IMG/VR virus record: IMGVR_UViG_3300042515_001753
Location: 124,001-188,000 of that record
DNA: 64,000 bases
Direction: 5' to 3' (one strand)
Part shown: in pieces, positions 2,824 through 62,892 of the stretch
Position numbering within the stretch: position 1 is the first letter of the stretch
Layout: every line of letters starts with the position of its first letter
Notes under the pieces: generated by a model
What the model was told of the DNA's origin: nothing
What the model saw: the letters and a program-made list of their open reading frames with translations, nothing else
The model's database searches: none
Made by a program: the position numbers and the translations under genes

Positions 2824-3090
2824 TCACCCCACCCAGGTCAGACGCTTCGCTTCGGGGTTGCACCAGTGCTGATGCCCCGGACCCTGCCAACCCACGAACG
2901 GGGTGTGAAGGTCTGCCAACTCAACAGCGGACAGACCATCATTCTCCCATCCCCGCGTATGGGAGTTTGCCTGATGCCCCTGCTTTACTTCCCATTCTGT
3001 GCCATTGAACTTAGGAAGGTTGCTGACCTTAGTTCCGACCCATACGGTGCTGCGGGTCTGGAGGTCGGATGCTTGGTTGTAGAGTGCCAT
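2824..3090 (-). CDS. small early hypothetical protein
   Basis: MALYNQ start follows the repeated leader. Confidence 0.55.
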   Translation of the reverse strand: MALYNQASDLQTRSTVWVGTKVSNLPKFNGTEWEVKQGHQANSHTRGWENDGLSAVELADLHTPFVGWQGPGHQHWCNPEAKRLTWVG

Positions 3091-8937: not shown

Positions 8938-9357
8938 CTAGAACGAAGAACTAAACACATAACCATTCACGAAGTCAAAGTCATATGATAGATTCTGCTG
9001 CCAAGTTGCCTCCCAATCAATTACCAAACCAGAAGGAACATCACCGAGGTCACTATAGAATTCTTCAGCGAAGTCAGCACCATCAGCATAACACCCACGA
9101 TAAGCATCTTCTACGTGCTCAACATACGAAACACTACCTTGATATTCAATAAAGGCATCAACTACATCATAACCAATATTCTCACCAACACGAACATACT
9201 CATCATAATATGCCACGAAGTCATCCTCATTGTGCTCATCAATAAACTTGAGAGCATCATCTAAATCATACTCACCTTCAACACAGTTCTCCTCAATGAA
9301 CTCAACAGTTTCCAGTTTCAGAACTTCTTTGTAGTTGGCAGTCATCGTGATAGTCAT
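8938..9357 (-). CDS. ArdA-like antirestriction (DNA mimic) protein
   Basis: Very acidic; C-terminal Y.G.Y....DFAEE...P..L.IDWEA.W...L..DF....GYVF resembles ArdA. Confidence 0.6.
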   Translation of the reverse strand: MTITMTANYKEVLKLETVEFIEENCVEGEYDLDDALKFIDEHNEDDFVAYYDEYVRVGENIGYDVVDAFIEYQGSVSYVEHVEDAYRGCYADGADFAEEFYSDLGDVPSGLVIDWEATWQQNLSYDFDFVNGYVFSSSF

Positions 9358-9427
9358 TTGGTGAATTGCTTGAGTACGAATGTAGAATAACAGGATTGAG
9401 GCAGGAAGTCTAGGGGTCTTGTGCCAC

Positions 9428-9619
9428 TTATGCCACTGGCACATCCTCCAACAGTTCTGGACTGTATTCTGTAACCTCTGTAATCAGTTCTTCATCAGTA
9501 TAATCGGTAAGATTTTCTACCATAGTATCATAAACAAAACGTTCCATAGTTTTGTAATCCATACTCTCAATCATTTGCTGGACGTAATCTTCAACGAGTT
9601 GGTCACGGTCGAATGTCAT
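9428..9619 (-). CDS. small acidic protein
   Basis: Paralog-like to 7826..8047 (DYTDEELITEVTEY vs DYTEEQIVNEITEIY). Confidence 0.6.
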   Translation of the reverse strand: MTFDRDQLVEDYVQQMIESMDYKTMERFVYDTMVENLTDYTDEELITEVTEYSPELLEDVPVA

Positions 9620-9691: not shown

Positions 9692-9904
9692 CTAGACTGT
9701 CACAAACATCGTCTTGTCAGGGTTGCGGTAGATGTTATCACCATACCACACTTCCAACTTCAAAGTGTTACCATAGAAGTTGCTCGGGATGCCATAACGA
9801 AGAAACCCTGAAGTTGTCTTGTAGTGACTAGTCAAACGCTGATTATTCATTCCACACTGATCATAACTGCCATCGGCATTCTGTCGGGTGTAGATAATCT
9901 TCAT
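9692..9904 (-). CDS. small hypothetical protein
   Basis: MKIIYTR start after the promoter cassette. Confidence 0.55.
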   Translation of the reverse strand: MKIIYTRQNADGSYDQCGMNNQRLTSHYKTTSGFLRYGIPSNFYGNTLKLEVWYGDNIYRNPDKTMFVTV

Positions 9905-9953
9905 TTGGATTTGTTTGGTATGAATGTAGAATAACAGGATTGAGGCAGGAAGT

Positions 9954-10139
9954 CTAGGGGTCTTGTGACAGTTCCTCAAGTGGCACAGTATCAATTCTCC
10001 TTGGTGTGTTGGGTGTATACTCTGGATGAGAATTCTCCCATTTGACTAGTTCATTAACCCAATCTTCCTGCCCTAATACATTAACCCAATCTTCCTGCCC
10101 TAATACATTCTTCCAGAAATTATCGTAGTTCATAATCAT
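9954..10139 (-). CDS. small protein with an internal 27-bp tandem duplication
   Basis: NVLGQEDWV twice. Confidence 0.45.
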   Translation of the reverse strand: MIMNYDNFWKNVLGQEDWVNVLGQEDWVNELVKWENSHPEYTPNTPRRIDTVPLEELSQDP

Positions 10140-10342
10140 ACCTCTGCCAGCAACAGTTTGTGAATACGGTCTGCTTCTTCTAGAACATCAGGGTCTAAAC
10201 GGTCCCATTCTACCCAATCATATGCAGACCCTGCAGTTTCATATGAACCATCAGATAGCAGCGGAGCATACATTAGGACCCGCTGATTGTTTGCATCCAG
10301 TTTGTAAGTGCAACCGTTGAGTTCGGAAATGACGAAAACCAT
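10136..10342 (-). CDS. small hypothetical protein
   Basis: MVFVISEL start after the cassette. Confidence 0.55.
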   Translation of the reverse strand: MVFVISELNGCTYKLDANNQRVLMYAPLLSDGSYETAGSAYDWVEWDRLDPDVLEEADRIHKLLLAEV

Positions 10343-10419
10343 TTGGTGTCTCAGGTATGAATGTAATATATCAGGGATTGTGGAGAACCGCAACCCCCCT
10401 TGTGCCAGTTCTCAGAGTG

Positions 10420-10611
10420 TCACATCACAACTCTGGAAGTATAAGGATTAGTCCTAACTTCCCAACGTTTCGCTGTAGGATACTGACGAAAGATAATCTC
10501 ATCAATCTTCTTCTCTATCCATTTGTTATACTTTTTATAATTGCCAATCTCTTGATTGAGTAGTAGAACATTATACTCTGAATCTTGGACTTGCAGATAC
10601 CAAGTTTGCAT
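10420..10611 (-). CDS. small hypothetical protein
   Basis: ORF with its own cassette. Confidence 0.55.
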   Translation of the reverse strand: MQTWYLQVQDSEYNVLLLNQEIGNYKKYNKWIEKKIDEIIFRQYPTAKRWEVRTNPYTSRVVM

Positions 10612-10699
10612 CGGTGAATTCCTCAGGTATGAATGTAGAATATCAGGGTTTAGGCAGGAAGTCTAGGGGTCTTGTGCCAGTTCGAGAATTGTCACATCA

Positions 10700-10940
10700 T
10701 TATATCCGGATACTAAAAAATCCTCCTATTCTTGATATCGTTTCAAGAACACGAGATAACTATATTCAGTTCGGTAATCTTCGTTTGTTCGCTATATTCG
10801 GCGCCGTGGGAAACCTATAGTTAAACCCTGTCCGCCTAGATGATATTTAAGGGATACTTAGTTTCTTATATTCTGTCAGATTGACTCTGTATCCCGCAGG
10901 AGAGTTCAAGTGCTGCTCTATGATATAAGAACTCAAGTGA
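10700..10940 (-). ncRNA. candidate structured late ncRNA with a pseudoknot
   Basis: No credible ORF; TATAAATA at 10944-10951; several inverted repeats; loop GGGATAC can pair with GTATCCC. Confidence 0.4.
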
Positions 10941-10981
10941 TTTTATTTATATAAGTTTGTGCCAATTAATGAAGTGGCACA

Positions 10982-11134
10982 TTACACCCACGGTTCGAGT
11001 TCCTTTATGCTAGCATAGACATCTTCGTCACCTTCGAGGTCTAGAAGGTCCTTCCAGTCGGTTGTTTCTATATCTAGGTCATCATAGCACATAATGTCTA
11101 ATGTAACCCGTACAAGGCGCTTCTGGGCAATCAT
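10982..11134 (-). CDS. small acidic protein (50 aa)
   Basis: Own translation MIAQKRLVRVTLDIMCYDDLD... Confidence 0.55.
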   Translation of the reverse strand: MIAQKRLVRVTLDIMCYDDLDIETTDWKDLLDLEGDEDVYASIKELEPWV

Positions 11135-11165
11135 AGGAGTCTCGTTGTGTGTGTACTAGATTATA

Positions 11166-11306
11166 TCATGCATAGTGACGATATGCAAGTGATTCGTAAT
11201 CATGTGCATCTCGCGCATAATCCTCGTCGAGATCTAGTGTATACCCGTCGAGATCATATGATGCATCGATGGTGTATGTATAGTCGAGATCGTAGTCGTC
11301 GTACAT
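11166..11306 (-). CDS. Asp/Tyr-rich peptide (46 aa)
   Basis: Own translation MYDDYDLDYTYTIDASYDLDGYTLDLDEDYARDAHDYESLAYRHYA. Confidence 0.45.
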   Translation of the reverse strand: MYDDYDLDYTYTIDASYDLDGYTLDLDEDYARDAHDYESLAYRHYA

Positions 11307-11815: not shown

Positions 11816-12547
11816 ATGGCACAGGGTATAGTATACGTCATCATCAACAAAGAAACGGGGCACAAGTACCTGAATGCAACCACACTGTCGATGAATAAAG
11901 AATGGCAGAATCACATTCAGGCATCAAACAGAATGTCCACTCAACTTATACACAGAGCATTCCGTCAATATGGACTACACAAGTTCATGATTAAACAGAT
12001 TGATGAATGTGATGAGAAAATACTGGAAGATAAGGTAACTTATTGGTTTGAACAATATAAACCAGAATATAATGATCCTCTACCCAAAAAGAAACCAGAA
12101 CCTATTATTATTGAAGAACCTGTTGTTGTAATAAAAGAAAAGAAATCAACCTGGAGACAAATTAAACCAGAAGAAAGATCAACCGGTAAATGTTTAAGTA
12201 TCAGAGTTCAGGGTACACATATTGAAACAGGTGAAGTTAAGGAATGGGAGAATGCCAGAGCTGCTGCATTAGAAATTACGGGAGATAAAAAAAGAAACAG
12301 TAACGTATTAAATGCCGCAAAGAAAGGTAATACCTACTATGGATACAGATGGAAAGTATTAGACACAAAAACTCATAAACGATCAGTCAAAGGAGTACAT
12401 AAAGTGACTCACGTTGAAGTTCATTATGAAAGCATTAGTGAGGCAATACGACAGATAGGTGATGGTAGTAATGGAAGTGGTTTGTTAAAGAGTCTACGCA
12501 ATCCCAACAAATATACCTACAAAGGTTTCTTATGGTTTTATGAATAA
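11816..12547 (+). CDS. degenerate GIY-YIG homing endonuclease-like protein with two NUMOD1-like HTH domains
   Basis: GIVYVIINKETGHKYLNAT (YIG degenerate); YESISEAIRQ...YKGFLW. Confidence 0.65.
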   Translation: MAQGIVYVIINKETGHKYLNATTLSMNKEWQNHIQASNRMSTQLIHRAFRQYGLHKFMIKQIDECDEKILEDKVTYWFEQYKPEYNDPLPKKKPEPIIIEEPVVVIKEKKSTWRQIKPEERSTGKCLSIRVQGTHIETGEVKEWENARAAALEITGDKKRNSNVLNAAKKGNTYYGYRWKVLDTKTHKRSVKGVHKVTHVEVHYESISEAIRQIGDGSNGSGLLKSLRNPNKYTYKGFLWFYE

Positions 12548-16965: not shown

Positions 16966-19900
16966 TTATTCTGGTGTCTCATCACTCAAAGAAACCCTGA
17001 GATTATCACCCCCAATATGAAGGTGAAATATCCTTCCATCATTCAAGTATATTCCGCACCAATATACATCTTCCGTCATATTTTCCCAGTGAACCATCTT
17101 CACATCTTCCAACACAAACTCATCAGGATTTTCAGTCATTTTGCCTCCCAGAGATTCCCAATGATACCACATTCGTGAAACCTTCTTGTAGTATCACAAT
17201 AACGACCATTAGATTTCCCAGTCACAACATTTCCAGTTACAAGTGGATGAACGCACAAATCAAATGTGTCCCCAGAACCAGTAATATGAGCAGACCAATC
17301 TTTTTTATAGTGCTTACAATCCTTACATAATTTTATTTCAGTCATTGATAAGGATTGGGTAGATTTTTGACTACTTCAGTAAAGAAAGAAAGACGGTCTT
17401 TGGTGTAAGCAACATCTACATTATGTGTCTCACAGAGTTTCATAATCTTCATAGTCTTTTCGTTGTAAAAAGAATATCCCTCAAATTGCCCATACTCAAC
17501 ATTATCAAGAAGTGATTCCTTCATCACCTCAAAGAGTTGAAAAAGTTCTTGTTGAGAGAGTTCTACTTGTCGTTCAGTTTGTTGGTGCCCGTTGAATGTG
17601 ATTTTCATAGTGTTTCAGCAAAAGATTTAGCATACTCATCATTCACCAGTTTACAGAGTCCCATAATGTCCTGTTTCATTTCAGGTGTTGTTCCTGTCTT
17701 ACAAACCTCATCATAGAAGTTAGTAAGTGAGACTGTGAGAATATTCAGTTGTCGTTGAGTGAGGTTCATTTGATGTTCAAATACTTTTTGTTGGAAATCA
17801 TATGGTCCAGAACTTGAGCAAGTTTCTGCTCATAAGTTGGATTATGATACTTCAAACATTCAACATAAGCATCGTGAAGACGAGCATACAAATCATCCCA
17901 GTGCTGTTTGTTAATGGTGGTCATTTCAATTTACTCCATACAATTCCAAAATCCTTTTCGCAACAACAATAGAAAGTTCTTTGTTGCCGATAGACATATC
18001 TTCGGTGATGTTTTTAGAACCTTCTTCAAGTGCTTTCTCACTTGAACGGATGTAAACTCCCGAATTGTCTGCGTTTAGTTCTACACGATAAACCATTTCC
18101 TCTGCTTCATCGGTGAATTCATAAACATCGGTCAAACTATGAACAATTTGAGTTCCGGAAACGATATTGTAAGGTTGAAAAGTCATTTGGAGAACCTCCT
18201 TTGTGTATAAAAGTATTATAAGGCATCAAAGGGCACCTGTGAAGTGCCCTTGTGCCGGTTTCTCAAGTGTCCTCAAGTCCAAGTTCTAACATTTGCCTTT
18301 GGGTGTTCCTTACAAGCATCCAACACCTCTTCCACAAAGGGAACAAAGTCTTTGTAAGTTCCCCAACCATTAGAAGCATCAAACTGCTTATAGTGTTCTG
18401 GATGAGATTTGAGTTTTAGAAGTCCTGCCTCAAGATGTGGAATAAGTTTATCAGCAGTTGGATTTTCATAAAGGTCATCAGGACGCCACAGACACTTATA
18501 GATGCCTGCTTCTTCTGCCATCGTATTCAGGTTGTGAGTGATGTTTCCAGAATACAACTCAACCTTATGAGGTTCAGGTGCTCCCGTATCAACTTCAATT
18601 TCCAACGAAATATCAAGAGACATAATGTGTTTGTGCTTATGAGACTATTATAAGGCATCCACAGGGGGATTGGTGAGGTCTTGTGCCGGTTCTTCAATCG
18701 TCTCTGTGTCTTCCAGTTCGTGTATAAGTTCCCAAAGGTCTCTACAACTCACTACCATATCACCACATCCAAATTCACGATATTCTTCAAACTCTTCAAT
18801 CACAAACCGAAGTGCGGCGGAGATTACTTTTTCCCTATCGTTCTTTTTGGGACGAAGAGTACAACACATCGTTGCTTCTACAATTCTATCTGCGGGTGAT
18901 AACATTATGCTACACCCTCCGCACTATCTTTGAATTCTTTTACTTTTTTAAGGAATGAAATTGATTGTTGATAAAGTGCCTCAATCAAGTCCTCAATATC
19001 AGCAATCGCAATCTCATTATACTCCCTGTTTAGGTTCTCACAACGCAGAGCATCAATCATAGACTGAAATGCGATAATTTGTTGCTGTTCTGGTGTGATA
19101 GGAGTTCCGTGAGGAAGTCCAGAACATTCAAGATTATGGAAATCATTATACCTTTGAAGCACACGATTACTCTTTTCTCTGCGTTCTGCTTCCTCAAACA
19201 TTTCGTCAGGATAAGGTTCAGTCATAATGCCTCCAGCACCTCAATAATACCCAGTATATCACGAACATTCACAACAAGCAACCCGTGGTCTCCATCTACA
19301 TTATAATTATCATAACCACACTGATTGATTAGTTCTCTCAAAAGAGCAGCATACTCATATCTCACTCTTGCAACCATCGGGTCGTCGTGTCCCTCACGAA
19401 TAAGTTTTCCCAGAGGAACACCACCATCAGAGACCCGGTGTGCGGCATTTAGAAGTTCTTGAGTTTGTTGTTGTGCTTTCAGTTTGCGGAGTTTCTGTGT
19501 TGCTCGTGCCGTGAGATACCTTTTGTTTTCTCGTAAGTTTTGGATTTCTTCTGGATTAAGTAGAAACCCGTCTGATATATTCCCGTATTCTTCAGTCATC
19601 TCTTATATCCTTGAACCATTGGGAAAATTCAATCCACTTTTCATCATTTACTTTTTTTTGAAGTTCAGCAGCAGGGTAGTTTTTGTTTATTTTATGACAC
19701 CAAGCAGTCATCTCATCAATAATAAGAACCCGATGCCTATTAAGCATTTCGCAGATTTGAGCATCAGTCATTCAGTTTTGCCTCAAGTTCGGCAATCTTC
19801 AGGTAGAGTTCCTCCAAGTGTGATGTGAGTTTATATGCGTTGATTTCACACATCTCATAGACACCATCGGTTGTGAGGTCTCCAAAGATGGTTCTCCAGT

Positions 19901-21100: not shown

Positions 21101-21878
21101 TCTTATTTATTATCGTTCTCTACCTCTTCTTCCAGTTGCTTATAAAGCGCACATTCGTATCCACACAAAAATGCACTTTCAACCCAACTAATAAGTATTT
21201 GTTTCCTTTGGTTCTCATCCTCAATTTTTATGTCGTCCATAAAGTATTCATACCGATATGTAAATCTACCGTAAAAATCTTCATAAAACCATTTGTTAAA
21301 TGAAAGTTGAGCGTCTTTTTGAGGGTCAAAATATTCATTTGCAGGATGTTTAGTCATCGTAGTTTCCTCTTGATTTTGGTGAGACAATCATTAAATCCTT
21401 CTACACTACACTCCACATAAATATTTTGACTTCCTGCTGCTGATTGTTCTTTCGGCAACCATTCTTTCTCAATTCTATCTACCAAACTTTCAATAGTCTC
21501 TGCTGCCTCATTATTATTGAGAAAGATTTCATCCCACCAATCAGCAATAATACCATAAAGAGTTTCTGGTTTCTTTGGTTCTTCCACTCTCTTATACTTC
21601 ACACCCATAATGGTTGCGTAGTCTCCTTCTATGAGAACTTTTGAGATGTCGGTTTCAGTCATTTTCTTTCATACAAGGGTATTCAAACTTTTCACCAATA
21701 CATTCTAACATAGTGCGGGCAAAGGTAATCTCACCATAAGCACAACCATCTTCAAAGGCATCATCATAACTACCAGCACTTGGAGTATAATCATCTCCAA
21801 ATAGACCTTCATAGCAGTGTTTTACCTCTGCTACTTCTTTGAGAACCTTGAGGAGAAGATTGAGTTTTTCTTCGTTAG

Positions 21879-22028
21879 TCATTGTAGAACATCAATAAGT
21901 TTGTTAAACATCCAAGAGATTATGAGTGCCTGTCCCCAAGTAAGAGGAAAGAAAGACACAAGTGCCCAACCCAATAATCCCACAACAATATAAAATCCAA
22001 TTGTTGCTCCAATCTCGTGTTTAGTCAT
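21879..22028 (-). CDS. small membrane protein, copy 1 (49 aa)
   Basis: MTKHEIGATIGFYIVVGLLGWALVSFFPLTWGQALIISWMFNKLIDVLQ. Confidence 0.6.
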   Translation of the reverse strand: MTKHEIGATIGFYIVVGLLGWALVSFFPLTWGQALIISWMFNKLIDVLQ

Positions 22029-25000
22029 TTTATGTTCCCCGTGAGAAATACTTTGAGTGTCTTCCCATCATTATGAAAACTTACCTGAACTTTAGAACAC
22101 TCATCCCATTCATCCCAAAAAAGGTCTCCATCATCATTTGAAATTACTTCAACACGATTTACATTTGGATACTTTTGAATGTTTTCAGTCATTTGAGGTT
22201 CCTCATAATGAATTCTTTGTATTCTCTTTGCCCCAACTTATAAGCATTCATAGAATAGTCGGTGTCTGGATATCCAATAGTATTAGGCAACCATTCTTTG
22301 AGTGCTTCAATCATAAACTCTATACTTCTTGGGTCAATTTTTCCACCACCTTCTTTGAGGACATAAAAGAAAAATGAGTTCTTGTTTGCTTGGTTCATTT
22401 CAATACCTCCAAGCAAATAGAACAGAGACAATCATCAGTGAATTGGTAGAACCAACCATCCTCGTGGTGAATGCGAAACTCTTTTGTGATTTGGTAAGTC
22501 ATCAGGTCTTTGTGTGTATGAGTGTATTATAAGGCATCCTGTGGGTCTGTGGAGGGGTCTTGTGCCAGTTCTTCAAGTGTCCTACAGACCCAAATGTTTT
22601 CTATCAGTATCACTCAAAGAAGCAAGGTCTTTCTTGAGTTGTTGTAGTTTTCGTTCCTTTGCTTTTACTTTCTCTGCCTTTTCTTTCTCCAGTTGTTTCA
22701 TCCGTTTATCATATTCCTTGTCGGTTTCTTCACGATGCTTGTAGAGATAATATTCAGTGTATTTTTCACCACCATAATCCCATTCATATTCACTCTCAAT
22801 CCCCTCCCAACCAGCATCTAATTCTGCTTGAAGTGAGGAAATAATGTCTTCAAGTTTTCCATCAATGTCCCCATAATACTTTTGAGTTTCTTTGACTTGA
22901 ATTTTTTTAGGTTGGTTAGTCATTTCAGTTCTCCATAAGAAAGTGTTTTGATTTCTTCTACATTCAAGGTTTTGACATAACCACGAGGATAATCATTATC
23001 ATAAGCATTAAAGACAAAAACAGGAATGTTTCGTTCCTTACAGATTTGTTTGAACTTGTCTTCATTCAGTTCAAACTTACCAACATACTCAACATTTGGA
23101 TACATATCCCAAGATGCTACAAGTCCTCCTGTATAATACCCCCACTCAAACTCATCAAGTTCTTGAATGATGTTTTCTACATCTTGAATGTTTTCTGGAT
23201 TAGTGTAGATGCGTCCGTATCCTTTGTAATTGAAGGCAGTCATTTCAGTTCCTCCAGTTCATTCGCAAGTTCAAGAATGTTCTTTTCAGTAATACCAATC
23301 CACTTGAGTTCTTCTACAACTTTACGAAGAGTAGCAACAGCAATAGTATGAGGATGAGATTGTTCCATATCACCCCAGTCAAATCTCACTTCTTCAATAG
23401 CATCTGCGACTGCTTGTGCCTCTTTAGTCATTTTCATTTCAGTTGTCCTCTATCAAACGAATGTTGTTTTCAATCTCACCTCTCATATCATAAAAATATG
23501 CTTTAGCAGCATCAAGACACCATTTATCGTAGTCATCTTGTGTAGGATAGTCTACATCTTCCAGTTCTCCCCACATTGAAATAAACTCATCTACGGAAAG
23601 TGTGTATTCCAGAGGAATGTATGCGACTTTGGGAATGATGTGGTTAGTCATTTCAGTCCAATCAGTTTAGCAAATTCAGGAGTAATGATGAGGTTTTGTT
23701 CTCTTACAAGATTACGAACTTCTTTACGAAGATTTATCCACTTGTTGTAGTAATCTTGTGATGCTTTTTGTGCTCTGTTTTTAGCATCAAAGTCGCACTG
23801 GTGTTCGTAGGTTCTACTTTCGTAGTATCTCATTTCAGTTCTTGGAGGACAGAGATAAAGGTTTCAAGGCAATCTTTGGGAATGTGAAAAGGTTCCCCCG
23901 TTTTAGTTTCTTCAATTCCGTGAGATGTGTATTGATTAATCTCTACAAGACCTTGACCATCATCAGTAAGTTGGTAGAACCAATCATCTTCAATGTTGTG
24001 AATACGAAGTTGTCGGGTGATTTGGTAAGTCATTTGATAGTCACCGTTTGATTTTTGATTTGGCAAAGACGGGAAAGATTATCACCCGCAGTAGCAACTT
24101 GAAGGAAGTTGTAGTTAGTTCCACATTGCTCGTTGAGTGCTTTCTGAGTTGTGAGGACCTGCATGACCCCTGTGATGGGGGCAGCAAGAAGAACCAAAAC
24201 AATACCACCAGTAATCACAGCAATCCAAGCATCCGTAAAATCAAAGTTGTTGCGTTTCATTTCAGTTCCTCAAAATTGATGTTTAATTTCTTCTTCTGTT
24301 GCTATCTCCACAATAGGATAACTCATATCTTCATAAGCACCAAAATCAAAATCAGTACTCAATCTTGAGGCAACATTATCGCACAGATAATCAGCAAAAA
24401 TTCCTGGGTCAAGTTCTCCATCATCTGTAAGCATATCATCATCCTTATGCTTTTCGGGGTCAAACCTCACATAAAAAGTTACTTTATAACCTTTTAGATT
24501 TTCCAAAGCATCATTTACCTTCTGCTGTTCCTTATGCTTTTGGATTTGAAGTTCAAGTTCGTTGAGTTGTTCTTTGGTCAGTTGTGAAAGGTCAATCATC
24601 AGGTGTCTGTGTGTATAAGAGTATTATAGGGCATCCAGAGGCACCCAGAGCATCCCCTGTGCCAGTTCTTCAAGTGTCCTTACACCGATGTAATGGAATA
24701 CGAAGAAACTGAAAGAACCTTCCAATATATCCTATCGGTTCTCCGCATTTAGGACAACAATAAGATGGATAAGTCATTTATCTTTCCAAGTAAAGTCAAA
24801 AAAGATTTTAGCACAATTCCTCACCAACCAGTTAGGTTTCTTATCCAGATACATTTTGATGTTTGGTTGAATAGACCAATAACCTACCTTATTTGTACCA
24901 ATTCTATACTCTGTATTCCAAGATACAGTATTATTGGCAACAAGATAAGAACCATCTGTTCCTACTGTAAGTGTTACTGGAAAACTACCATATTTTTTTG

Positions 25001-25569
25001 CGGATTCAAAGTCCTCATCCTGTTTCTTACAGAACTCATCATACCTTTTCAACTTATACAACCAGTTGTGCCCAATCCTATATTCAAGATGAGTTTTCTC
25101 AATCAGTTTCTCAAACTTCTCTTCCAGTTCTTGTGAGATTTCTTCTAATGACTTGCGTGGTAATTGAAATGAACCTTTGATTTCAGGATGCTTATAAGGA
25201 ATGGTGAAGTATTCCTTTGCGACTTCATATTGTTCATTATCTTCACCCATAGAAGCAATCAAACCCATAGTATCAAAGACATTTTTTATATCTTTGATGG
25301 TTTTGAGTTTGCTTGTATCAAGTTTGTGATTTAGTCGTTCAGTCATTTTACAGCATCCACAAATACAGGAACTTGACCACAAATCTCATTTGCCGCAGTA
25401 TCATTCACACCATAAGATTTTCTACATTCTATCACAATCTCATAAGATTTCAAGAACATCTCTCTGTCCTTTTGAGTATTGTAAGTGTTTAGTAGTTCCA
25501 TAGAAAGGAAATAACCAGTAATGATAAGAAGTGGAATAATGAGAGTAAAGATAAAAAGTTTCATTTCAG

Positions 25570-25782
25570 TCATAATCCTTTGCGTGATACTTCTTCATTT
25601 AATTCCCAACCAGCATCGTGCCCCACTTTGAAACCTTTAGTATAACCTTCATCATAAAGTTCTCGGGCAAACTTCAAGAGGTCTTCTTCATCACATTCCC
25701 AGTAAATGTCGTTTGTTGTTTTACTTATGTGTCTATCAAACCCATAGGATTTAGCAAGTTCAATAATTTCAGGATTAGTCAT
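25570..25782 (-). CDS. hypothetical protein, copy 1
   Basis: Near-identical to 27834..28046. Confidence 0.65.
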   Translation of the reverse strand: MTNPEIIELAKSYGFDRHISKTTNDIYWECDEEDLLKFARELYDEGYTKGFKVGHDAGWELNEEVSRKGL

Positions 25783-27833
25783 TCTTCAATCTCCAAGAAC
25801 ACCAGACCTTACACTATCCACACCTTCTCCATAACCATCACTATAACCCTTATTATATGCCTTATAAGTAGATATAAGAGCAAACTTTACAGCAACCTCA
25901 CGGAAGGCATTATTGAGAGCACCAATCATTTCAGTATTCATTCCAAACTGGGTTCCATCTCCCCAGAGTTCAATAAGTTCTTGTTCAGTCATCAGTTTGC
26001 CTCCAACTTGTAGTAATCATACTTCACCTTACACCCCTTTGGTTGTTCCATACAATACACAATTACTTTTTCTTCTGTTTCTTGTCGTGCGGTGACTGTT
26101 CCCAAGAGAAGTCCTGGAAAAAATCCTATCACAATACCACTAAGGATAATACCAAGAGTTGGTGTAAGATTGTCGTCAGTCATCAGTTTGCCTCCAATTC
26201 AGTAGCAATATCTAAAATTGCCTCACGAATACTTTCATTTCTTGTTTCAAGTGCTTCATCCCATTCTCTATGCCCTGAAAAACAGGCATAATTTTCAGGG
26301 GCAACATTATCAGCAAGAACACGAAGAGCAGCAGCAAAACCCTCTCGGATTGTTCCTCCGTTAGAAAATACTTCATCGGCAGCATCTATGATTGCTTGTG
26401 TTTGGGGTGAAAGGTTAGTCATCGGTTGGTTGCTTATGAGTGTATTATAGGGCATCACAGGAGCATTTGGAGTGTCCTTGTGCCAGTTCGTCAAGTGTCC
26501 CTCACAATACCTCACAAAGCCCTTGAATACTATACCTTGTAATAAATCCTTTGGTTGTGTATTTTTTCTTATAATTCTCAATAAACTCTTTTGCTTCTTT
26601 TTTGGTTTCAAATGTACCGAAGTTGCGATAGAATTCTTCAATAGTACCATCATAACTATCAATATAAGTTCTCACAATCCACTTATGAGAATGCTCTGGG
26701 TAAAAATCATTTTCTTCTATGTGTTTATAGTATTCTTCTTTACTCATAATACATATCCTCCTCATACTTCACATAATCACTTTGAAGATAATTGAAGAAC
26801 TCTCCATCATCGTGGGTCATAGTCCAGCACCATTCATCAAAACATTCACCAATCCAATACCAACCAGATTGGAGTTTCTCAAAGACATTCATAGGTCTGT
26901 TGTATTTCATTTCTCCTCTACCCAAGTACAATCAAAACAAAGTTTCATCATAAACCTCACAAACCTATTAGGAACGTGTCCTTCTTGTGGAGTATAAGCA
27001 ATTCCACAACCAGGACTACCACCAAACATATAACAAGTCCAATTAGATTGTTTTGGATTATGAATGTAGGAAGATATATAAGGATACGGTAGATTATCCC
27101 CAGAAGGTTTTACTGGTTGTCCTATGTTATACTCCATCGCATCAACATCCCAACCACAACATTCCACAGCACTATGAAGTGTAGAAAGAAACTCTGGGGT
27201 GATAAGTTCTTTGAGTTCTTGTTTCGTCATTTCAAATTTTCTCCCAAAACAGTAAGACATTCTTCATATCCTTTCAAGTATTCTCCAGTCATCACATTAT
27301 GAGTGTATTGAGACATCCATTCTTTTACAATTTCACAAAACTCATCACAATCAGGTACAATCCATACTGTTTCATGAAATAATTGATGAAGAGTTTTGAG
27401 TTCTTCTGGTTCTTCTTCTGGTTCTTGTGATACTTTCTCTTCATAAGCAGCATTATAACCCTGCTCAAAATTCGTCCAAGTTGAACCATCCCAACAAGTA
27501 TCGGCAATATCAGTCACAGGATACCTACCATAAACTCTTTTGAATGCTTCTTCTACTGGTGATTTTGTTTTTTCCAGTTCCTCCAAGAATGAGAGTTTCT
27601 TCTCAAGCATTTTGATTTCTGCTTTTACTTTTTGAATTTCAGTCATTTTAGTTCCTCAATAATGGATTTGATTTGTTTGAGATTATCATAGTTTTCTTTA
27701 TGAAAATCATAAAGTTCAGACAAACTCTCTATGTTATTTTCGGTATAATTAGTTTCCTCACGGATTTCCCAAGAAAGACTTTCCATCTCTCCTGATGCTT
27801 CTTCAAGATAATAGTTGAGAGTATCAAGTAAAG

Positions 27834-28046
27834 TCATAACCCTCTGCGTGATACTTCTTCATTTAGTTCCCAACCAGCATCGTGCCCTACTTTGAAACCT
27901 TTAGTATAACCCTCATCATAGAGTTCTCGGGCAAACTTCAAGAGGTCTTCTTCATCACATTCCCAGTAAATGTCGTGTGTTGTTTTACTTATGTGTCTAT
28001 CAAACCCATAGGTTTCAGCAAGTTTTAGAAGTTCTTCGTTAGTCAT
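27834..28046 (-). CDS. hypothetical protein, copy 2
   Basis: Near-identical to 25570..25782. Confidence 0.65.
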   Translation of the reverse strand: MTNEELLKLAETYGFDRHISKTTHDIYWECDEEDLLKFARELYDEGYTKGFKVGHDAGWELNEEVSRRGL

Positions 28047-29925
28047 TTTCTAAAAAGTCGTTCAAGTTTTTCTTTGTTCTTGAAGAGTTCATAAGATTTG
28101 ATTTGCTCTCCATAATACTTACTGATGTGCCTACACAAATCTTCTTCTTGTTTAGTAATATCCAGATTATGTTTGTCTTTCATGATAAGGATAGTTTCAA
28201 TATCTTTGAGAGCACTAACTGGAATATCTAAAAACTCTTCGTAGGTCATAATTACCACTCCAATTCAACATACACATAATCCCTCAAATAATCAGGAAGG
28301 TTTTCTTTCAGGTATTCTACCATATATTCTTGAAGTTCATAAGCAGTTGGAGAGCACTCTTCAATCAACACACCATACTCCGCATCCTCATCGTGAATAC
28401 TATACTTCACATATACATCAACCACTCGCAGGTCAGCATAATTTACACCACTAAATCGTTCGGTGGAGTTCTTATGTTCTTCAAGTGCCTTTGTAGCAAC
28501 TTCTTGAATTTGAAATAGATTGTCTTTGATGTTGGAGTTCATTTGTTGTATTTCAGTAGCATTTTGAGTGTTGTTGATGGTTCCATACTCTCATCAATCT
28601 TATGAGGTTCCAGAAGTTCTACAAGTTCCTCATACTTCTTCTTATAGTCAATACCCAAATCAACTTCATCCCCAGAAAGAGCATCCCTGATGATTTCTAT
28701 GGATGTGAATATATTATGCCCTTCCCGTATATTTGGTGGAAATATACCATACACAAAATCATAGGTATGTCCTCGTTTATGAAGATATTTTCTAATTTCA
28801 TCTTCAGTCAAAGAAAAGTTGAAAGTATAACCAAATTTTTCACTACAATAATCAAATTTCATTTTTTCACTCCTGTAAGTTCATTTCGTTTCCAGTCATA
28901 CCATAATTCAAATAGTAAAAGAACTGTATTCTCAATCTATCTGGATTTTTGAAACCATCCAAATGAGGATACATAGTTCCTCTCCAAGTGTATAAACAAT
29001 ATTCAAAAACACTTATGGATGTTTGAATAGTCCATTTATGTTTCATCGGTTTCATTTTGCCCTCATCGCAGTAATCACAGCATTTCTTACGGTTTTTCCT
29101 TTTAGATGGTTCATACGAGACCCACCATTCATAAACACCCAATCACTTTCACCATTCATTTGGAGATTGTGTGGATGAAATTGATTGAGTAGAAATTCAA
29201 GGATTTCTGTGTCTGTTGGTTCAGTCATTTTCTTCATCGGGTAGTTTTTCATTCAAATCAATACCATCTAAAACTTTATCAGACCATTTTAGCACATTCT
29301 CAATCAGTTTATCATTAACTTCTTTTTTCTTTTCCACAAACTTTTCAATCAGTTCATCATTAGGGTCGTTGAGGATTTGTTTTACTGGGTCTTTCTCTTC
29401 AATCATCAGTTTGATTTGTTTGAGATTATCATAAAGTTCTTTATTGAAGTCATAACATTCAGTCAAATGGTCTATGTTGTTGTCCTCATAGTTAGTTTCC
29501 TCACGGATTTCCCAAGACAAACCATCCATATCTGCTGCGGTTTCTGTGAGAAAGTATTCAAGTGTTTCAAGTAAATTCATTTTCTAATCACAGCAATTAC
29601 TTTACGGTTTGGATACTTCTCTACAATTATATCACGAGCATTCTCATAATCAATAGCATCCTTTACGGTTTCATAATACACAGTTTTATCTGCGTCATCC
29701 CAAGTTTGAACTTCGTAAGTCATTTTTCCTCCCAAAAAGGGTTTCATTTCAATCCACTCATACAAATAGAACAAAGACAATCATCAGTTTTAGGAACTCT
29801 AAACATAATGTGATTTCCAGAGCAACAATCTCTATCACCACATTTCATACAATTATCGCAAACCCACTCTTTTTGATTACGACATTTGACGAAATCTTCA
29901 AGAGTGTATTGTTGGAGAATAGAAG

Positions 29926-30075
29926 TCATTCTAATACATCAATAAGTTTGTTAAACATCCAAGAGATTATGAGTGCCTGTCCCCAAGTAAGAGGAAAGAA
30001 AGACACAAGTGCCCAACCCAATAATCCCACAACAATATAAAATCCAATTGTTGCTCCAATCTCGTGTTTAGTCAT
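29926..30075 (-). CDS. small membrane protein, copy 2
   Basis: 149 bp identical to 21889-22037. Confidence 0.6.
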   Translation of the reverse strand: MTKHEIGATIGFYIVVGLLGWALVSFFPLTWGQALIISWMFNKLIDVLE

Positions 30076-31321
30076 TTTATGTTCACCTTGAAGAGTTTGT
30101 AGATGGCATCAGCAACAGCAAGTGCTTCTACATTTCCCATACAAATATGTTGAATTCGTTTATCTCCTTTTTCTTTATCAAACTGCCAATAAGAAATGGT
30201 GCATCCATCGCATCCCACATCAATATGAGTGTCTTCTACCGTATACCAATAATCTCCGTATTCTTGAATACGAACTTGGTTTGTGATTTCAATAGTCATT
30301 TGGAGTTCCTTTGGTTATGAGACTATTATAAGGCATCTGGTGCCCCTGTGGAGGGGTCTTGTGCCAGTTCGTCAAGTGTCCTCTGTTCTTCAAGGATTGT
30401 TTCAAAAATCATTCTGGTATAGGTTTCTGTTGCTCCCGACTGTCTTGCTAATCTTATAATGTCTTTATCTTTATTAGTCATCCACATAAACCTCAAAGAT
30501 AATTTTATTACGCACAATACCCATTATATCCCTTTCCATACTCATACTCGCAACCTGTGCTTTTCCTTGTTGGATTTTATCTACTACTTGTTGAAAAGAT
30601 ACATTCAAGTCATCAGGGTCATAACATTTTGCGAGTTTTCGTGGTTTTGATTTCTCTACTGGTTTTGGAGGTTCTGGTGGTTTTGGATTGTGGATTTCAT
30701 TATATTTTTCAATTAGTGGATTAGTCATTTTCTTTACAATACCTTTGATATTCCCAATGATGAACCATTTCTACAAGGAAGAACACTTTGAGGTGCTCCT
30801 TTGAGTTTCTCTGGGTTGAGTTTATATCCCGTTGTTCCTATTTTTAGTGTTGGTTCAATCATAAGGTATCCATTCGGCAAAACTAAAGATATAAGCAAGT
30901 CCCCATTCTAATGTATGAGGTGGTAGTTCGTCAATATGATTAAACGCAAGTCGTCTTGCTTCCAAGATGCGTTCTCTACCTACCGCAAGTAGATTTGCTT
31001 TAGAACCTTTGAGAAACTCATTATAATCTGCCTGATTATTCTGTTTCGCACCAGAGATATACAATCGTCTCATTTCAGTAAAAAGTTCTGCGGTTTCGGG
31101 GGCAAATGTAATCACTTCTTCCCCCAAAGGGATTTCCATAGTTTTCATCGCACTCATAGAAAACTTCATAGCATCTCTGGTTTCTTCTACTGATAAGGCA
31201 TCTTCATCCTCATCACGAAACTTATACTGAATAATACCATTTGAACATTCAATCACTCTCAACAGAGCAATCTTGCCCTTCTCTGCGTCAGGTAGTGCTT
31301 GAAATCTTGTGTCCCAGTCAA

Positions 31322-31924
31322 TCATTTTTTTCCAAGTCTCCAACCATCACCGGGACATTCTAGCATCATTTTACAATTTCCGCAACCATCATTCCACCAC
31401 TTTTTACCTTTTCGTGCCTCACTCATTTTTCTTCTGGTTTCTTCTGAATGATTTTTACCTTTTTGCGATTCACTTAATTTTCTTTTGGTTTCTTCGGAAA
31501 AAGTTTTACCTTTTTGCGATTCACTCATATTTCTTCTGGATTCTTCTGAATGAGTTTTACCTTTATGTGATTCACTTATTTTTCTTCTTATTTCTTTTGA
31601 ACGAGGTTTGCCTTTAAGTGCTTCACTCATTTTTCTTCTGGTTTCATCACTTACAACAGCACCAGAAACTCCATCTCCACCATTAGTTTTATTATGAAGA
31701 ATACCAGTTCCCAAATCTTTTCTACCGAACACCGCAATCATATAAACCTCGTGCCTAAACGATTCTTCTTCGGTTAAGTTTTGTTTTAGAATAAGTATTT
31801 TTGATTTATCTTTTGGTGGTTTGATGCCTTTATCTCTTCTTCTATATGCCCTATTACCTTTACCTTTTCCTATGTAATAAGGTGTCTTATCTTCACGCAA
31901 ATATGCGTAAGTGTAGTAATACAT
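31322..31924 (-). CDS. GIY-YIG homing endonuclease with NUMOD3 repeats
   Basis: YYTYAYLRED.TPYYIGKG..R, E..MI..FGR, L.N.T.GGDG; about 5 copies of SEETRRKMSE.KGK. Confidence 0.85.
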   Translation of the reverse strand: MYYYTYAYLREDKTPYYIGKGKGNRAYRRRDKGIKPPKDKSKILILKQNLTEEESFRHEVYMIAVFGRKDLGTGILHNKTNGGDGVSGAVVSDETRRKMSEALKGKPRSKEIRRKISESHKGKTHSEESRRNMSESQKGKTFSEETKRKLSESQKGKNHSEETRRKMSEARKGKKWWNDGCGNCKMMLECPGDGWRLGKK

Positions 31925-62817: not shown

Positions 62818-62818
62818 G

Positions 62819-62892
62819 TGCTCATTGTGGGAATCTAACCCACCTTCGGCGCTTTATGAGAACGCTGCATTCAAACAGATTGCTAAATGAGC
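62819..62892 (-). tRNA. tRNA with CAU anticodon (Met or Ile2), atypical D and T loops
   Basis: GCTCATT/AATGAGC acceptor, GCGTT-CTCATAA-AGCGC, T-loop TTAGATT. Confidence 0.7.

What the first reader, a model, noticed from the sequence alone, without database searches (positions are those of the whole stretch)
10700..10951. Candidate ~240-nt structured late ncRNA with a pseudoknot
Seen: TATAAATA (10944-10951) precedes a long irregular hairpin (10857-10937: TTCTTATAT/ATATAAGAA, CAG/CTG, TTGA/TCAA, CTCT/AGAG). Its loop (10889-10895) is the exact 7-nt complement of 10851-10857 at the stem base. Further stems are 10757-10764/10816-10823 and 10729-10735/10743-10749, followed by a T run. There is no credible ORF and the next gene has its own promoter. 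I cannot match it to an RNA family I know.
Basis: partly seen in the sequence, partly recalled or inferred. Interest (0 to 1): 0.6.

Follow-up and report, generated by a model that had tools for sequence, protein, structure and literature searches.

The report
New late small RNA of cyanophages

Summary
I read the region as a stand-alone transcription unit of about 224 nt (10938 to about 10715). It has a T4-type late promoter, TATAAATA (10951-10944), and two structured domains. The first is an 83-nt 5' rod capped by a UNCG tetraloop (10938-10856). The second is a hairpin with an internal loop (10836-10800). An intrinsic terminator follows (10755-10715).

I found 68 distinct relatives in viral and metagenome contigs. 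Sixty-one have an exact TATAAATA at the same distance. The helices hold through compensatory changes. None has a conserved ORF. No Rfam family matches any variant.

However, other family members carry a different, covariation-supported H-type pseudoknot in place of domain 2.

The unit is bracketed by two copies of a 22-bp palindrome and is missing from many close relatives. In 56 of 68 members it lies beside a small acidic protein gene (phrog_12516). Transcription could not be tested, and the function is inferred only.

The parts
10982..11134 (-). Upstream 50-aa acidic protein gene (phrog_12516, function unknown). It is the one gene consistently linked to the RNA.
   Evidence: ORF. PHROG hit E = 1e-13. 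A family member lies within about 1 kb on the same strand in 56 of 68 distinct RNA loci: 34 upstream, 22 downstream.
10959..10980 (-). Palindrome copy 1, GTGCCA-N10-TGGCAC, directly after the stop codon. It is the left boundary of the RNA cassette.
   Evidence: Sequence. It belongs to a repeat family with at least 13 copies in the window. Relatives L020, L021 and L031 have a single copy and no RNA.
10944..10951 (-). T4-type late promoter box TATAAATA. The predicted start is A10938, 6 nt downstream (inferred).
   Evidence: An exact TATAAATA lies 29-36 nt before GCAGC in 61 of 68 distinct relatives, and 5 more have NATAAATA.
10856..10938 (-). Domain 1, an 83-nt rod. It consists of closing helix ACUUG/UAAGU, UUCUUAUAU/AUAUAAGAA, internal loop CAUAGAG/ACAGA, CAG/CUG, UUGA/UCAA, CUC/GAG, UCC/GGA and tetraloop UGCG (10898-10895).
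   Evidence: RNAalifold. Pair counts on 65 distinct sequences: 88% of cells paired against 79% in shuffles and 29-52% when slid. Pair 37-58 is CG 34 / UA 29 / GC 2 and pair 39-56 is CG 45 / UA 20, with none unpaired. Basal helices differ in sequence between groups but still pair.
10837..10855 (-). A/U-rich linker, variable in sequence.
   Evidence: Alignments.
10800..10836 (-). Domain 2 (type I), a hairpin. It consists of GGCG/CGCC, an internal loop, GGG/CCC, AAC/GUU and a 5-nt apical loop.
   Evidence: Gapless alignment of 32 distinct sequences: 93% paired against 24-61% when slid. Pair 5-41 is GC 24 / AU 5 / GU 1 / UA 1 and pair 7-39 is CG 23 / UA 7 / AU 1. The outer helix was in no search pattern.
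10756..10799 (-). Variable 3' spacer. It contains a 16-nt insertion relative to most relatives and the segment TATAGTTA, which pairs with the domain-2 loop only in the window, L083 and L214.
10715..10755 (-). Intrinsic terminator: CUC-GUG-UUCUUGA-loop-UCAAGAA-UAG-GAG, then GA and U6 (10720-10715).
   Evidence: Fold. UUCUUGA/UCAAGAA becomes UUUUUGA/UCAAAAA in relatives. A hairpin plus U-run lies 197-288 nt from the predicted start in most members although the sequences are unrelated.
10674..10695 (-). Palindrome copy 2, GTGACA-N10-TGGCAC. It is the right boundary of the cassette and the start of the promoter cassette of the next gene (10420-10611).

Best explanation
Window 10938 to about 10715 (minus strand) is a stand-alone gene for a structured non-coding RNA of about 224 nt. 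It belongs to a previously undescribed family found in T4-like cyanomyoviruses (Kyanoviridae-like, mostly uncultured).

Shown:
- A conserved TATAAATA box sits at a fixed distance upstream.
- The 5' rod begins at the predicted first nucleotide. Its internal loops and three of its helices are nearly invariant in sequence.
- A second structured domain follows.
- A hairpin plus U-run terminator ends the unit.
- No ORF is conserved.
- There is one copy per genome.
- The unit behaves as a cassette: two copies of the phage's repeated intergenic palindrome flank it, and it is present or absent among close relatives.

Inferred:
- The phage late transcription machinery (gp55/gp33-type) transcribes it late in infection.
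- It ends at the terminator, and it is stable because its 5' end is held in a helix.

Most likely mode of action (inference, about one chance in three): it acts in trans as a protein-binding RNA, either a decoy or a scaffold. Its recognition site would be the invariant internal loops of the 5' rod. Domain 2 and the terminator would be exchangeable stabilising modules. The partner may be connected with the neighbouring small acidic protein.

The confidence given (0.75) is for the identity as a conserved structured non-coding RNA gene, not for the mode of action.
For: Promoter:
- TATAAATA is exact in 61 of 68 distinct members, at 29-36 nt from GCAGC.
- In this genome, 28 of 30 TATAAATA sites are on the coding strand and 21 lie 18-60 nt before a start codon.
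- NATAAATA is the accepted late promoter of cyanomyoviruses (PMC2984593).

Structure:
- RNAalifold and pair counts support the helices.
- Two pairs in helix 4 covary perfectly, with no unpaired cell in 65 sequences.
- The outer helix of domain 2 covaries at three pairs.
- The basal helices have six unrelated sequences that all pair, and they start at nucleotide 1-2 of the predicted transcript.
- The tetraloop is UGCG, UACG or UUCG.

Strand:
- The domain-2 alignments have 42 G-U cells against 4 A-C cells.
- The UNCG loop, the promoter and the U-run all fit the minus strand.

Non-coding:
- The longest sense ORFs are 34 codons or fewer.
- They lie in different frames, mostly without ATG, and 1-nt indels occur in conserved parts.

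Selection:
- The rod core is 77-85% identical between groups whose adjacent protein is 32% identical.

Terminator.

Single copy.

Cassette behaviour:
- Searches show 73 loci with the neighbouring gene, of which 12 carry the RNA.

Phage-specific:
- There was 1 match in 185,579 prokaryote genomes, on a 3.3-kb contig that looks like a misbinned phage contig.

New:
- Rfam gave no match for any variant.
- There was no blastn match in 50,697 phage records.
Against:
- The window's own minimum-energy fold prefers the GGGAUAC/GUAUCCC pairing over the consensus rod, and the whole-region z-score is only -1.95.
- The generic terminator scan did not list the site, because its inner stem has only two G-C pairs.
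- Helices 2, 3 and 5 never vary, so they are supported by conservation only. Part of that invariance comes from the exact-pattern searches used to collect members.
- The basal helix is misaligned between groups, with 72% of cells paired.
- Nothing tested here identifies a protein partner or a target. The protein-binding mode rests only on the conservation pattern.
Confidence: 0.75

Rival explanations
1. It is a base-pairing regulatory small RNA. The RNA is made late and pairs through an exposed stretch with host or phage mRNAs to change their translation or decay. Candidate stretches are the A/U-rich linker and the conserved GAAUAU-NA-CUAAC segment before the terminator.
For: The architecture is that of a classic bacterial sRNA: its own promoter, stem-loops and an intrinsic terminator. 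Semi-conserved, probably single-stranded segments exist: UAUAUNAU in the linker, and GAAUAU(C/A)A(CU)AACUC, shared by groups A and B and by L114.
Against: The most conserved nucleotides lie inside helices and internal loops of the rod, not in an open seed. The linker varies a lot. A crude duplex test against the 5' region of the linked gene's mRNA gave z-scores around 0 in 8 of 9 members. The host genome is unknown, so host targets could not be searched.
Confidence: 0.2
2. It is a cis-acting leader, either a riboswitch or an attenuator. The folded part senses a ligand or a protein and decides whether late transcripts stop at the terminator or read through into the downstream genes.
For: A conserved structured domain followed by a terminator is the layout of a transcriptional riboswitch. 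In members with the second type of 3' module, UCCUG can pair either with an upstream CAGGA or with the terminator's AGGAG. In 22 of 68 members the gene downstream is always the phrog_12516 gene.
Against: In 34 of 68 members, including the window, that gene is upstream of the RNA, and the downstream genes differ between relatives. The downstream gene has its own promoter cassette, which in group C is a perfect TTGACA-17-TATAAT. Domain 2 exists in two unrelated architectures, which is hard to reconcile with one ligand pocket. No riboswitch model matches.
Confidence: 0.1
3. It is a DNA-level element rather than a functional RNA. The conserved block would be a recombination, replication or packaging signal, or just the filling of a mobile intergenic cassette. 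The hairpins would then be DNA structures or accidents.
For: Repeated palindromes bracket the unit and it comes and goes among relatives. A homing endonuclease gene lies 0.9 kb away. PeSL-type cassettes are known recombination substrates in T4-like phages (PMC2839356).
Against: Compensatory changes keep the pairing. G-U pairs outnumber A-C pairs 42 to 4, which only makes sense for one RNA strand. The UNCG tetraloop varies only at N. The promoter box and the U-run terminator are kept in members that lack the palindromes.
Confidence: 0.05
4. It is a decayed or unconventional small protein gene.
For: A 29-codon TTG-initiated ORF lies at 10847-10936. Most neighbouring units in this region are tiny protein genes.
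Against: The ORF is lost in relatives. The longest ORFs differ in frame and position. ATG ORFs are 0-28 codons. Single-base indels sit in conserved blocks. No ribosome-binding site follows the promoter.
Confidence: 0.02

Closest known systems
Unannotated element in Synechococcus phage S-SRM01 (MW015081, about 86.3-86.6 kb, minus strand), a cultured freshwater cyanomyovirus
   Same: The layout is the same: the 22-bp palindrome, then TATAAATA, then a long rod whose tip reads CUGAACUCUCC-UACG-GGGUCAAGAGUCAG, then a GGUUUUUGUUGUAUC-type end. It lies next to the phrog_12516 gene, in a 750-nt stretch with no annotated feature.
   Different: The match to the family model is weak (29.5 bits, E about 1e-5 to 1e-4, against 70-94 bits for members). 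It lacks the invariant AGAGCAGC...CUGACAG loops. It is on the opposite strand to the protein gene. Its homology is probable but not established.
CfrI of cyanophage S-PM2 (about 225-nt RNA) and the Rfam cyanophage motifs (PhotoRC-II, wcaG, manA, glnA, abiF)
   Same: All are non-coding RNAs encoded by T4-like cyanophages. CfrI is of similar length (PMC2984593, PMC9964418).
   Different: CfrI is antisense to psbA and a homing endonuclease gene. Here nothing is encoded on the opposite strand. The Rfam motifs are cis-regulatory leaders or a short sRNA, and none of their models matches.
PeSL cassettes (promoter-early stem-loop) of T4-type phages
   Same: Repeated intergenic units flank small accessory genes in a hyperplastic region, and relatives differ by precise gain or loss of one unit between two repeats (PMC2839356).
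   Different: The cargo here is an RNA gene with a late promoter rather than an ORFan with an early promoter. The repeat is a 22-bp palindrome plus a G+C hairpin whose promoter geometry does not fit the sigma-70 spacing. Neither promoter activity nor recombination was tested.
Small stable RNAs of phage T4 (species 1 and 2, also called RNA C and RNA D)
   Same: They are phage-encoded stable structured RNAs of unknown function in a T4-type genome (from general knowledge, not tested here).
   Different: The T4 RNAs are processed out of the tRNA cluster transcript. This RNA has its own late promoter and terminator, lies far from the tRNA cluster, and shares no detectable similarity.

Membership tests
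Any Rfam 15 family | Covariance-model match at or near the gathering score | tested here: not met
   In the window only tRNA reached threshold. At E up to 10 on 10300-11300 there were only chance-level miRNA and snoRNA hits. Six loci carrying other variants gave nothing relevant at E up to 1.
T4-type late transcription unit | TATAAATA box about 6 nt upstream of the start, with no -35 element needed | tested here: met
   The box lies at 10951-10944. It is conserved in 61 of 68 members at a fixed distance. The genome-wide bias fits promoter use.
T4-type late transcription unit | The phage encodes gp55, gp33 and gp45, and the transcript appears late | not tested
   The literature says all cyanomyoviruses carry g55, g33 and g45 (PMC2984593). 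I did not search this genome for them, and no RNA reads could be obtained.
Intrinsic (rho-independent) terminator | Stable hairpin immediately followed by a U-run | tested here: met
   The extended hairpin 10755-10723 is followed by GA and U6. The stem covaries. The equivalent feature occurs in most members. The simple scan missed it because the inner stem has only 2 G-C pairs.
Structured ncRNA (evolutionarily conserved secondary structure) | Compensatory base changes beyond what controls give | tested here: met
   0 of 500 shuffles reached the observed covariation score or percentage paired. Slid controls gave 24-61% paired against 88-99% observed. Caveat: the shuffle control ignores phylogeny, and R-scape was not available.
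   10889-95/10851-57 is broken in L083 and deleted in the others. The pairing of the domain-2 loop with 10757-64 is kept in 3 of 41 members. A different pseudoknot is supported only in type II members, which do not include the window.
PeSL-type mobile cassette | Flanked by repeated promoter/stem-loop units, and relatives differ by precise presence or absence between the repeats | tested here: met
   Palindromes lie at 10959-10980 and 10674-10695. L020, L021 and L031 go straight from the stop codon to a single palindrome. The repeat family is shown.
PeSL-type mobile cassette | The repeats act as sigma-70 early promoters and terminators, and recombination yields mini-circles | not testable with these tools
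   This needs reporter assays and inverse PCR as in PMC2839356. The spacing between the TTGA-like box and the TATAAT-like box (about 30-39 nt) does not fit a standard sigma-70 promoter.
Riboswitch or transcription attenuator | Constant association with a downstream gene class, and a single conserved ligand-binding core | tested here: not met
   Downstream genes vary, and the linked gene is upstream in half of the members. There are two unrelated domain-2 architectures.

The most novel reading that the evidence does not exclude
The RNA and the adjacent small acidic protein (phrog_12516) form a two-part accessory module of cyanophages. In it, a late-made, very stable RNA binds and sequesters a conserved host or phage protein through the invariant loops of its 5' rod. 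Candidate partners are the sigma-70 form of RNA polymerase (these phages lack AsiA and MotA), an RNase, or a defence protein. That would be a new RNA-based host-takeover or counter-defence mechanism.
Probability: 0.12. Interest if true: 0.85.

Novelty: new variant of a known kind. Interest (0 to 1): 0.6.

Why it matters
Very few non-coding RNAs of cyanophages are known. Those that are known are an antisense RNA or cis-acting leaders.

- This is a stand-alone, late-promoter-driven structured RNA family with at least 68 distinct members.
- Its core is more conserved than the proteins encoded around it.
- It sits in the variable region, where host-takeover and anti-defence genes gather.
- It is linked to one small protein gene.

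That makes it a concrete, testable candidate for an RNA-based function in the late phase of infection of globally important cyanobacteria. It also shows that the shuffled cassettes of T4-like phages can carry RNA genes as well as ORFans.

Tried and rejected
- blastn of the window element and of two other variants against 50,697 phage records found nothing apart from the repeated promoter cassette.
- The family model found nothing in the whole genomes of S-SM2, SynMITS9220M01 and Bellamy. In S-SRM01 it gave one weak but plausible hit and one weak hit inside coding sequence, which I take for chance.
- The gapped pattern TCCTNCGGGA..CAANCTGAC returned mostly chance matches. Only 3 of 61 new loci passed the model.
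- A cognate versus non-cognate duplex test for the basal helices was only weakly informative (permutation p = 0.012), because my trimming cut into the stems.
- The RNA-mRNA duplex test against the linked gene showed no signal, and it was a crude test.
- The Atlas look-up of the 50-aa protein gave only unnamed clusters, and Pfam gave none.
- Considered and dropped without a formal test beyond Rfam: 6S RNA, SRP RNA, group II intron domain V, self-cleaving ribozymes, type III antitoxin repeats, CRISPR-repeat mimics, and omega/guide RNAs. None has its defining sequence or repeat features here.

Full report
**Setting**

- The window is bases 124001-188000 of a 233,886-bp viral record.
- Its nearest cultured relatives by DNA are T4-like Synechococcus myoviruses such as S-SRM01, S-T4, ACG-2014f and S-PM2.
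- Around the finding, nearly all genes lie on the minus strand. All coordinates below are window coordinates read on that strand.
- The finding fills most of a 370-nt gap between a 50-aa gene (10982-11134) and a 63-aa gene (10420-10611).

**Observation**

- Taken alone, the window gives only modest statistical support. TATAAATA occurs 5 times against 4.4 expected.
- The minus strand folds with z = -1.95 and the plus strand with z = -0.59.

**Relatives**

- The upstream 50-aa protein retrieved 73 viral loci.
- blastn and, later, a covariance model found the element in only 12 of them.
- In others, such as L020, L021 and L031, the stop codon is followed directly by the next gene's promoter cassette.
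- Exact-pattern scans with two conserved stretches, followed by a model search, raised the set to 68 distinct sequences from viral and metagenome contigs.
- Only one match occurred in 185,579 prokaryote genomes. It lies on a 3.3-kb contig binned with a freshwater actinobacterium, and the contig carries the phage palindromes.
- The own genome has one copy.

**Promoter and ends**

- Sixty-one of 68 members have an exact TATAAATA 29-36 nt before the conserved GCAGC. Five more have NATAAATA.
- In this genome, 28 of 30 TATAAATA sites lie on the coding strand. Twenty-one of them sit 18-60 nt before a start codon. The one at 10944-10951 is among the few with no gene behind it.
- NATAAATA is the accepted late promoter of cyanomyoviruses, which have g55, g33 and g45 but lack motA and asiA (PMC2984593).
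- If transcription starts 6 nt after the box, at A10938, then in every sequence group the first one or two nucleotides already belong to a helix that closes domain 1.
- A hairpin followed by a U-run lies 197-288 nt downstream in most members, although the hairpin sequences are unrelated between groups.
- In the window this is 10755-10723 followed by U6 at 10720-10715. Its stem UUCUUGA/UCAAGAA becomes UUUUUGA/UCAAAAA in relatives.
- The generic terminator scan did not call this site, because its inner stem has only two G-C pairs.

**Domain 1 (10938-10856)**

- RNAalifold on an unfitted MAFFT alignment gives CAG/CUG, UUG/CAA, CUC/GAG and UCC/GGA under a UNCG tetraloop.
- On 65 distinct sequences, two pairs of the CUC/GAG helix switch together with no unpaired case: CG 34 / UA 29 / GC 2 and CG 45 / UA 20.
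- Overall, 88% of cells pair, against 79% in shuffles and 29-52% when the partner is slid.
- The tetraloop reads UGCG, UACG or UUCG.
- The two basal helices have different sequences in six groups, and all of them pair. Examples are CUUAUAU/AUAUAAG, UUUGUUUC/GAAACAAG, UCAUUC/GAAUGA and CUAUUC/GAAUAG.
- Their register differs between groups, so the column-wise count for that helix is only 72%.
- Three helices and the internal loops AGAG/ACAG and CNC/U never vary. Part of that invariance comes from how members were collected. However, the 3' strands were free in the first two patterns and the 5' strands were free in the third.
- The rod core is 77-85% identical between groups whose adjacent protein is 32% identical.

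**Domain 2 (10836-10800)**

- In 32 distinct sequences of equal length, the outer helix GGCG/CGCC was in no search pattern.
- It shows GC 24 / AU 5 / GU 1 / UA 1 at one pair and CG 23 / UA 7 / AU 1 at another. Overall, 93% of cells pair against 24-61% when slid.
- Twenty-four of the 68 members carry a different module in this position: an H-type pseudoknot.
- That pseudoknot has stem GGGAG/CUCC, an A-rich linker, and a loop pairing ACGG:UCGU in one subgroup and CCUG:CAGG in another. In it, 99% of cells pair and two pairs covary.

**Strand and coding**

- In the two domain-2 alignments, G-U cells outnumber A-C cells 42 to 4. This fits an RNA read from the minus strand.
- The longest sense ORFs are 34 codons or fewer. 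They lie in different frames and mostly lack ATG. One-base indels lie in conserved blocks.

- GGGAUAC/GUAUCCC is broken in L083, which is 96.5% identical over the element. The 3' arm is deleted in all more distant members. The 5' arm belongs to the conserved UCC/GGA helix.
- The 8-bp pairing of the domain-2 loop with 10764-10757 exists only in the window, L083 and L214.
- The near relatives L271 and L275 have TATACTTA there, while the loop is unchanged.
- Both pairings may form in this particular phage, but neither is a family feature.

**Context**

- The unit of about 285 nt is bracketed by two copies of a 22-bp palindrome (10959-10980 and 10674-10695).
- That palindrome is the first part of a repeated intergenic cassette: the palindrome, a G+C-rich hairpin, then a TATAAT-like box. 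The window holds at least 13 copies.
- Together with the precise presence or absence in relatives, this resembles the PeSL cassettes that shuffle ORFans in T4-type phages (PMC2839356). Here the cargo is an RNA gene.
- Neighbouring genes include an anti-restriction-like protein (8938-9444) and a GIY-YIG/HNH homing endonuclease on the opposite strand (11816-12547).
- The phrog_12516 gene is within about 1 kb on the same strand in 56 of 68 members. It is upstream in 34 and downstream in 22. Several of the remaining 12 have truncated flanks.
- The wider synteny, with phrog_1574 and the gp25 baseplate gene further downstream, is shared too.
- The protein is much more widespread than the RNA.

**Comparison with known RNAs**

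- No Rfam model matches any variant.
- The cyanophage RNAs listed in the literature are CfrI, PhotoRC-II, wcaG, manA, glnA and abiF. They are either antisense or cis-regulatory, and they are different (PMC9964418, PMC2984593).
- Among cultured phages, only S-SRM01 shows a probable distant homologue. It lies in an unannotated 750-nt gap and has the same order of palindrome, TATAAATA and a UACG-capped rod.

**Function**

Nothing here shows what the RNA does. Four observations bear on it:
- Conservation is concentrated in internal loops rather than in an open stretch.
- The 5' end is sequestered in a helix.
- Domain 2 is interchangeable between two architectures.
- The distribution is accessory and cassette-like.

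These make a trans-acting, protein-binding RNA the most likely reading, at roughly one chance in three. A base-pairing sRNA comes next. A cis-acting attenuator is less likely, because the downstream genes vary and have their own promoters. A crude duplex test against the linked gene's mRNA gave no signal.

**Limits**

- Members were gathered with exact patterns, which inflates apparent invariance.
- The shuffle control does not correct for phylogeny.
- The host is unknown.

Noticed in passing
window, e.g. 10674-10695, 10959-10980, 9413-9443, 9957-9987, 10394-10424, 18675-18705, 22554-22584, 30353-30383: A repeated intergenic cassette lies on the coding strand. It consists of a 22-bp palindrome GTGNCA-N10-TGNCAC right after stop codons, then a G+C-rich hairpin, then a TATAAT-like box and the next start codon. 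The window has at least 13 copies. The 30-39 nt spacing between the TTGA-like and TATAAT-like boxes does not fit a normal sigma-70 promoter. The palindrome could be a regulator site or an mRNA 3' hairpin.
   Followed up: partly
window 10982-11134 (-) and loci L079-L292: The small acidic protein gene (phrog_12516, 50-57 aa, function unknown) is adjacent to the RNA gene on the same strand in 56 of 68 family members, in two alternative orders. The protein also occurs in many phages without the RNA, including the cultured phages S-SM2, Bellamy, P-TIM68, S-CAM7 and S-SRM01.
   Followed up: partly
L101, L107, L109-L111, L113-L115, L146, L160, L177 and metagenome loci (alignment A6): In place of the window's hairpin domain 2, 24 family members carry an H-type pseudoknot. 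It has a GGGAG/CUCC stem, an AAUAAAA linker, and a loop-to-downstream pairing that switches between ACGG:UCGU and CCUG:CAGG.
   Followed up: yes
L211 2668-3418 (S-SRM01 MW015081, about 85.98-86.73 kb): A 750-nt stretch in a cultured freshwater phage has no annotated feature. It holds the palindrome, TATAAATA and a divergent UACG-capped rod on the minus strand, plus an apparently unannotated plus-strand ORF at about 2888-3060.
   Followed up: partly
L208 2290-2360, L209 2290-2370, L210 2290-2360, L211 2140-2190: The cultured phages S-SM2, SynMITS9220M01, Bellamy and S-SRM01 share another conserved non-coding block (GTGATCTAAGCGAGC ... AAATGTCAA) upstream of their phrog_12516 gene. It is unrelated to the RNA studied here.
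   Followed up: no
window 11816-12547 (+): A 243-aa GIY-YIG/HNH-type homing endonuclease gene is the only plus-strand gene in the neighbourhood, 0.9 kb upstream of the RNA. Homologues sit at the same place in L094 and L095.
   Followed up: no
window 8938-9444 (-): A 168-aa protein matches phrog_36653, annotated as an anti-restriction protein (E = 4e-32). A shorter paralogue-like ORF lies at 9692-9994.
   Followed up: no
window 31402-31656; 21877-22044 and 29924-30091; 25568-25783 and 27832-28047: A tandem repeat with a 51-nt period is present, along with two pairs of duplicated blocks (97% and 92% identical).
   Followed up: no
own genome 37627 (-), outside the window; genome 31-38 kb: A second TATAAATA with no long gene behind it precedes a 49-codon ORF and a strong terminator. 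It lies inside a cluster of 20 tRNA genes.
   Followed up: partly
window 62818-62892 (-): A lone tRNA-Met (CAT) gene sits far from the main tRNA cluster.
   Followed up: no
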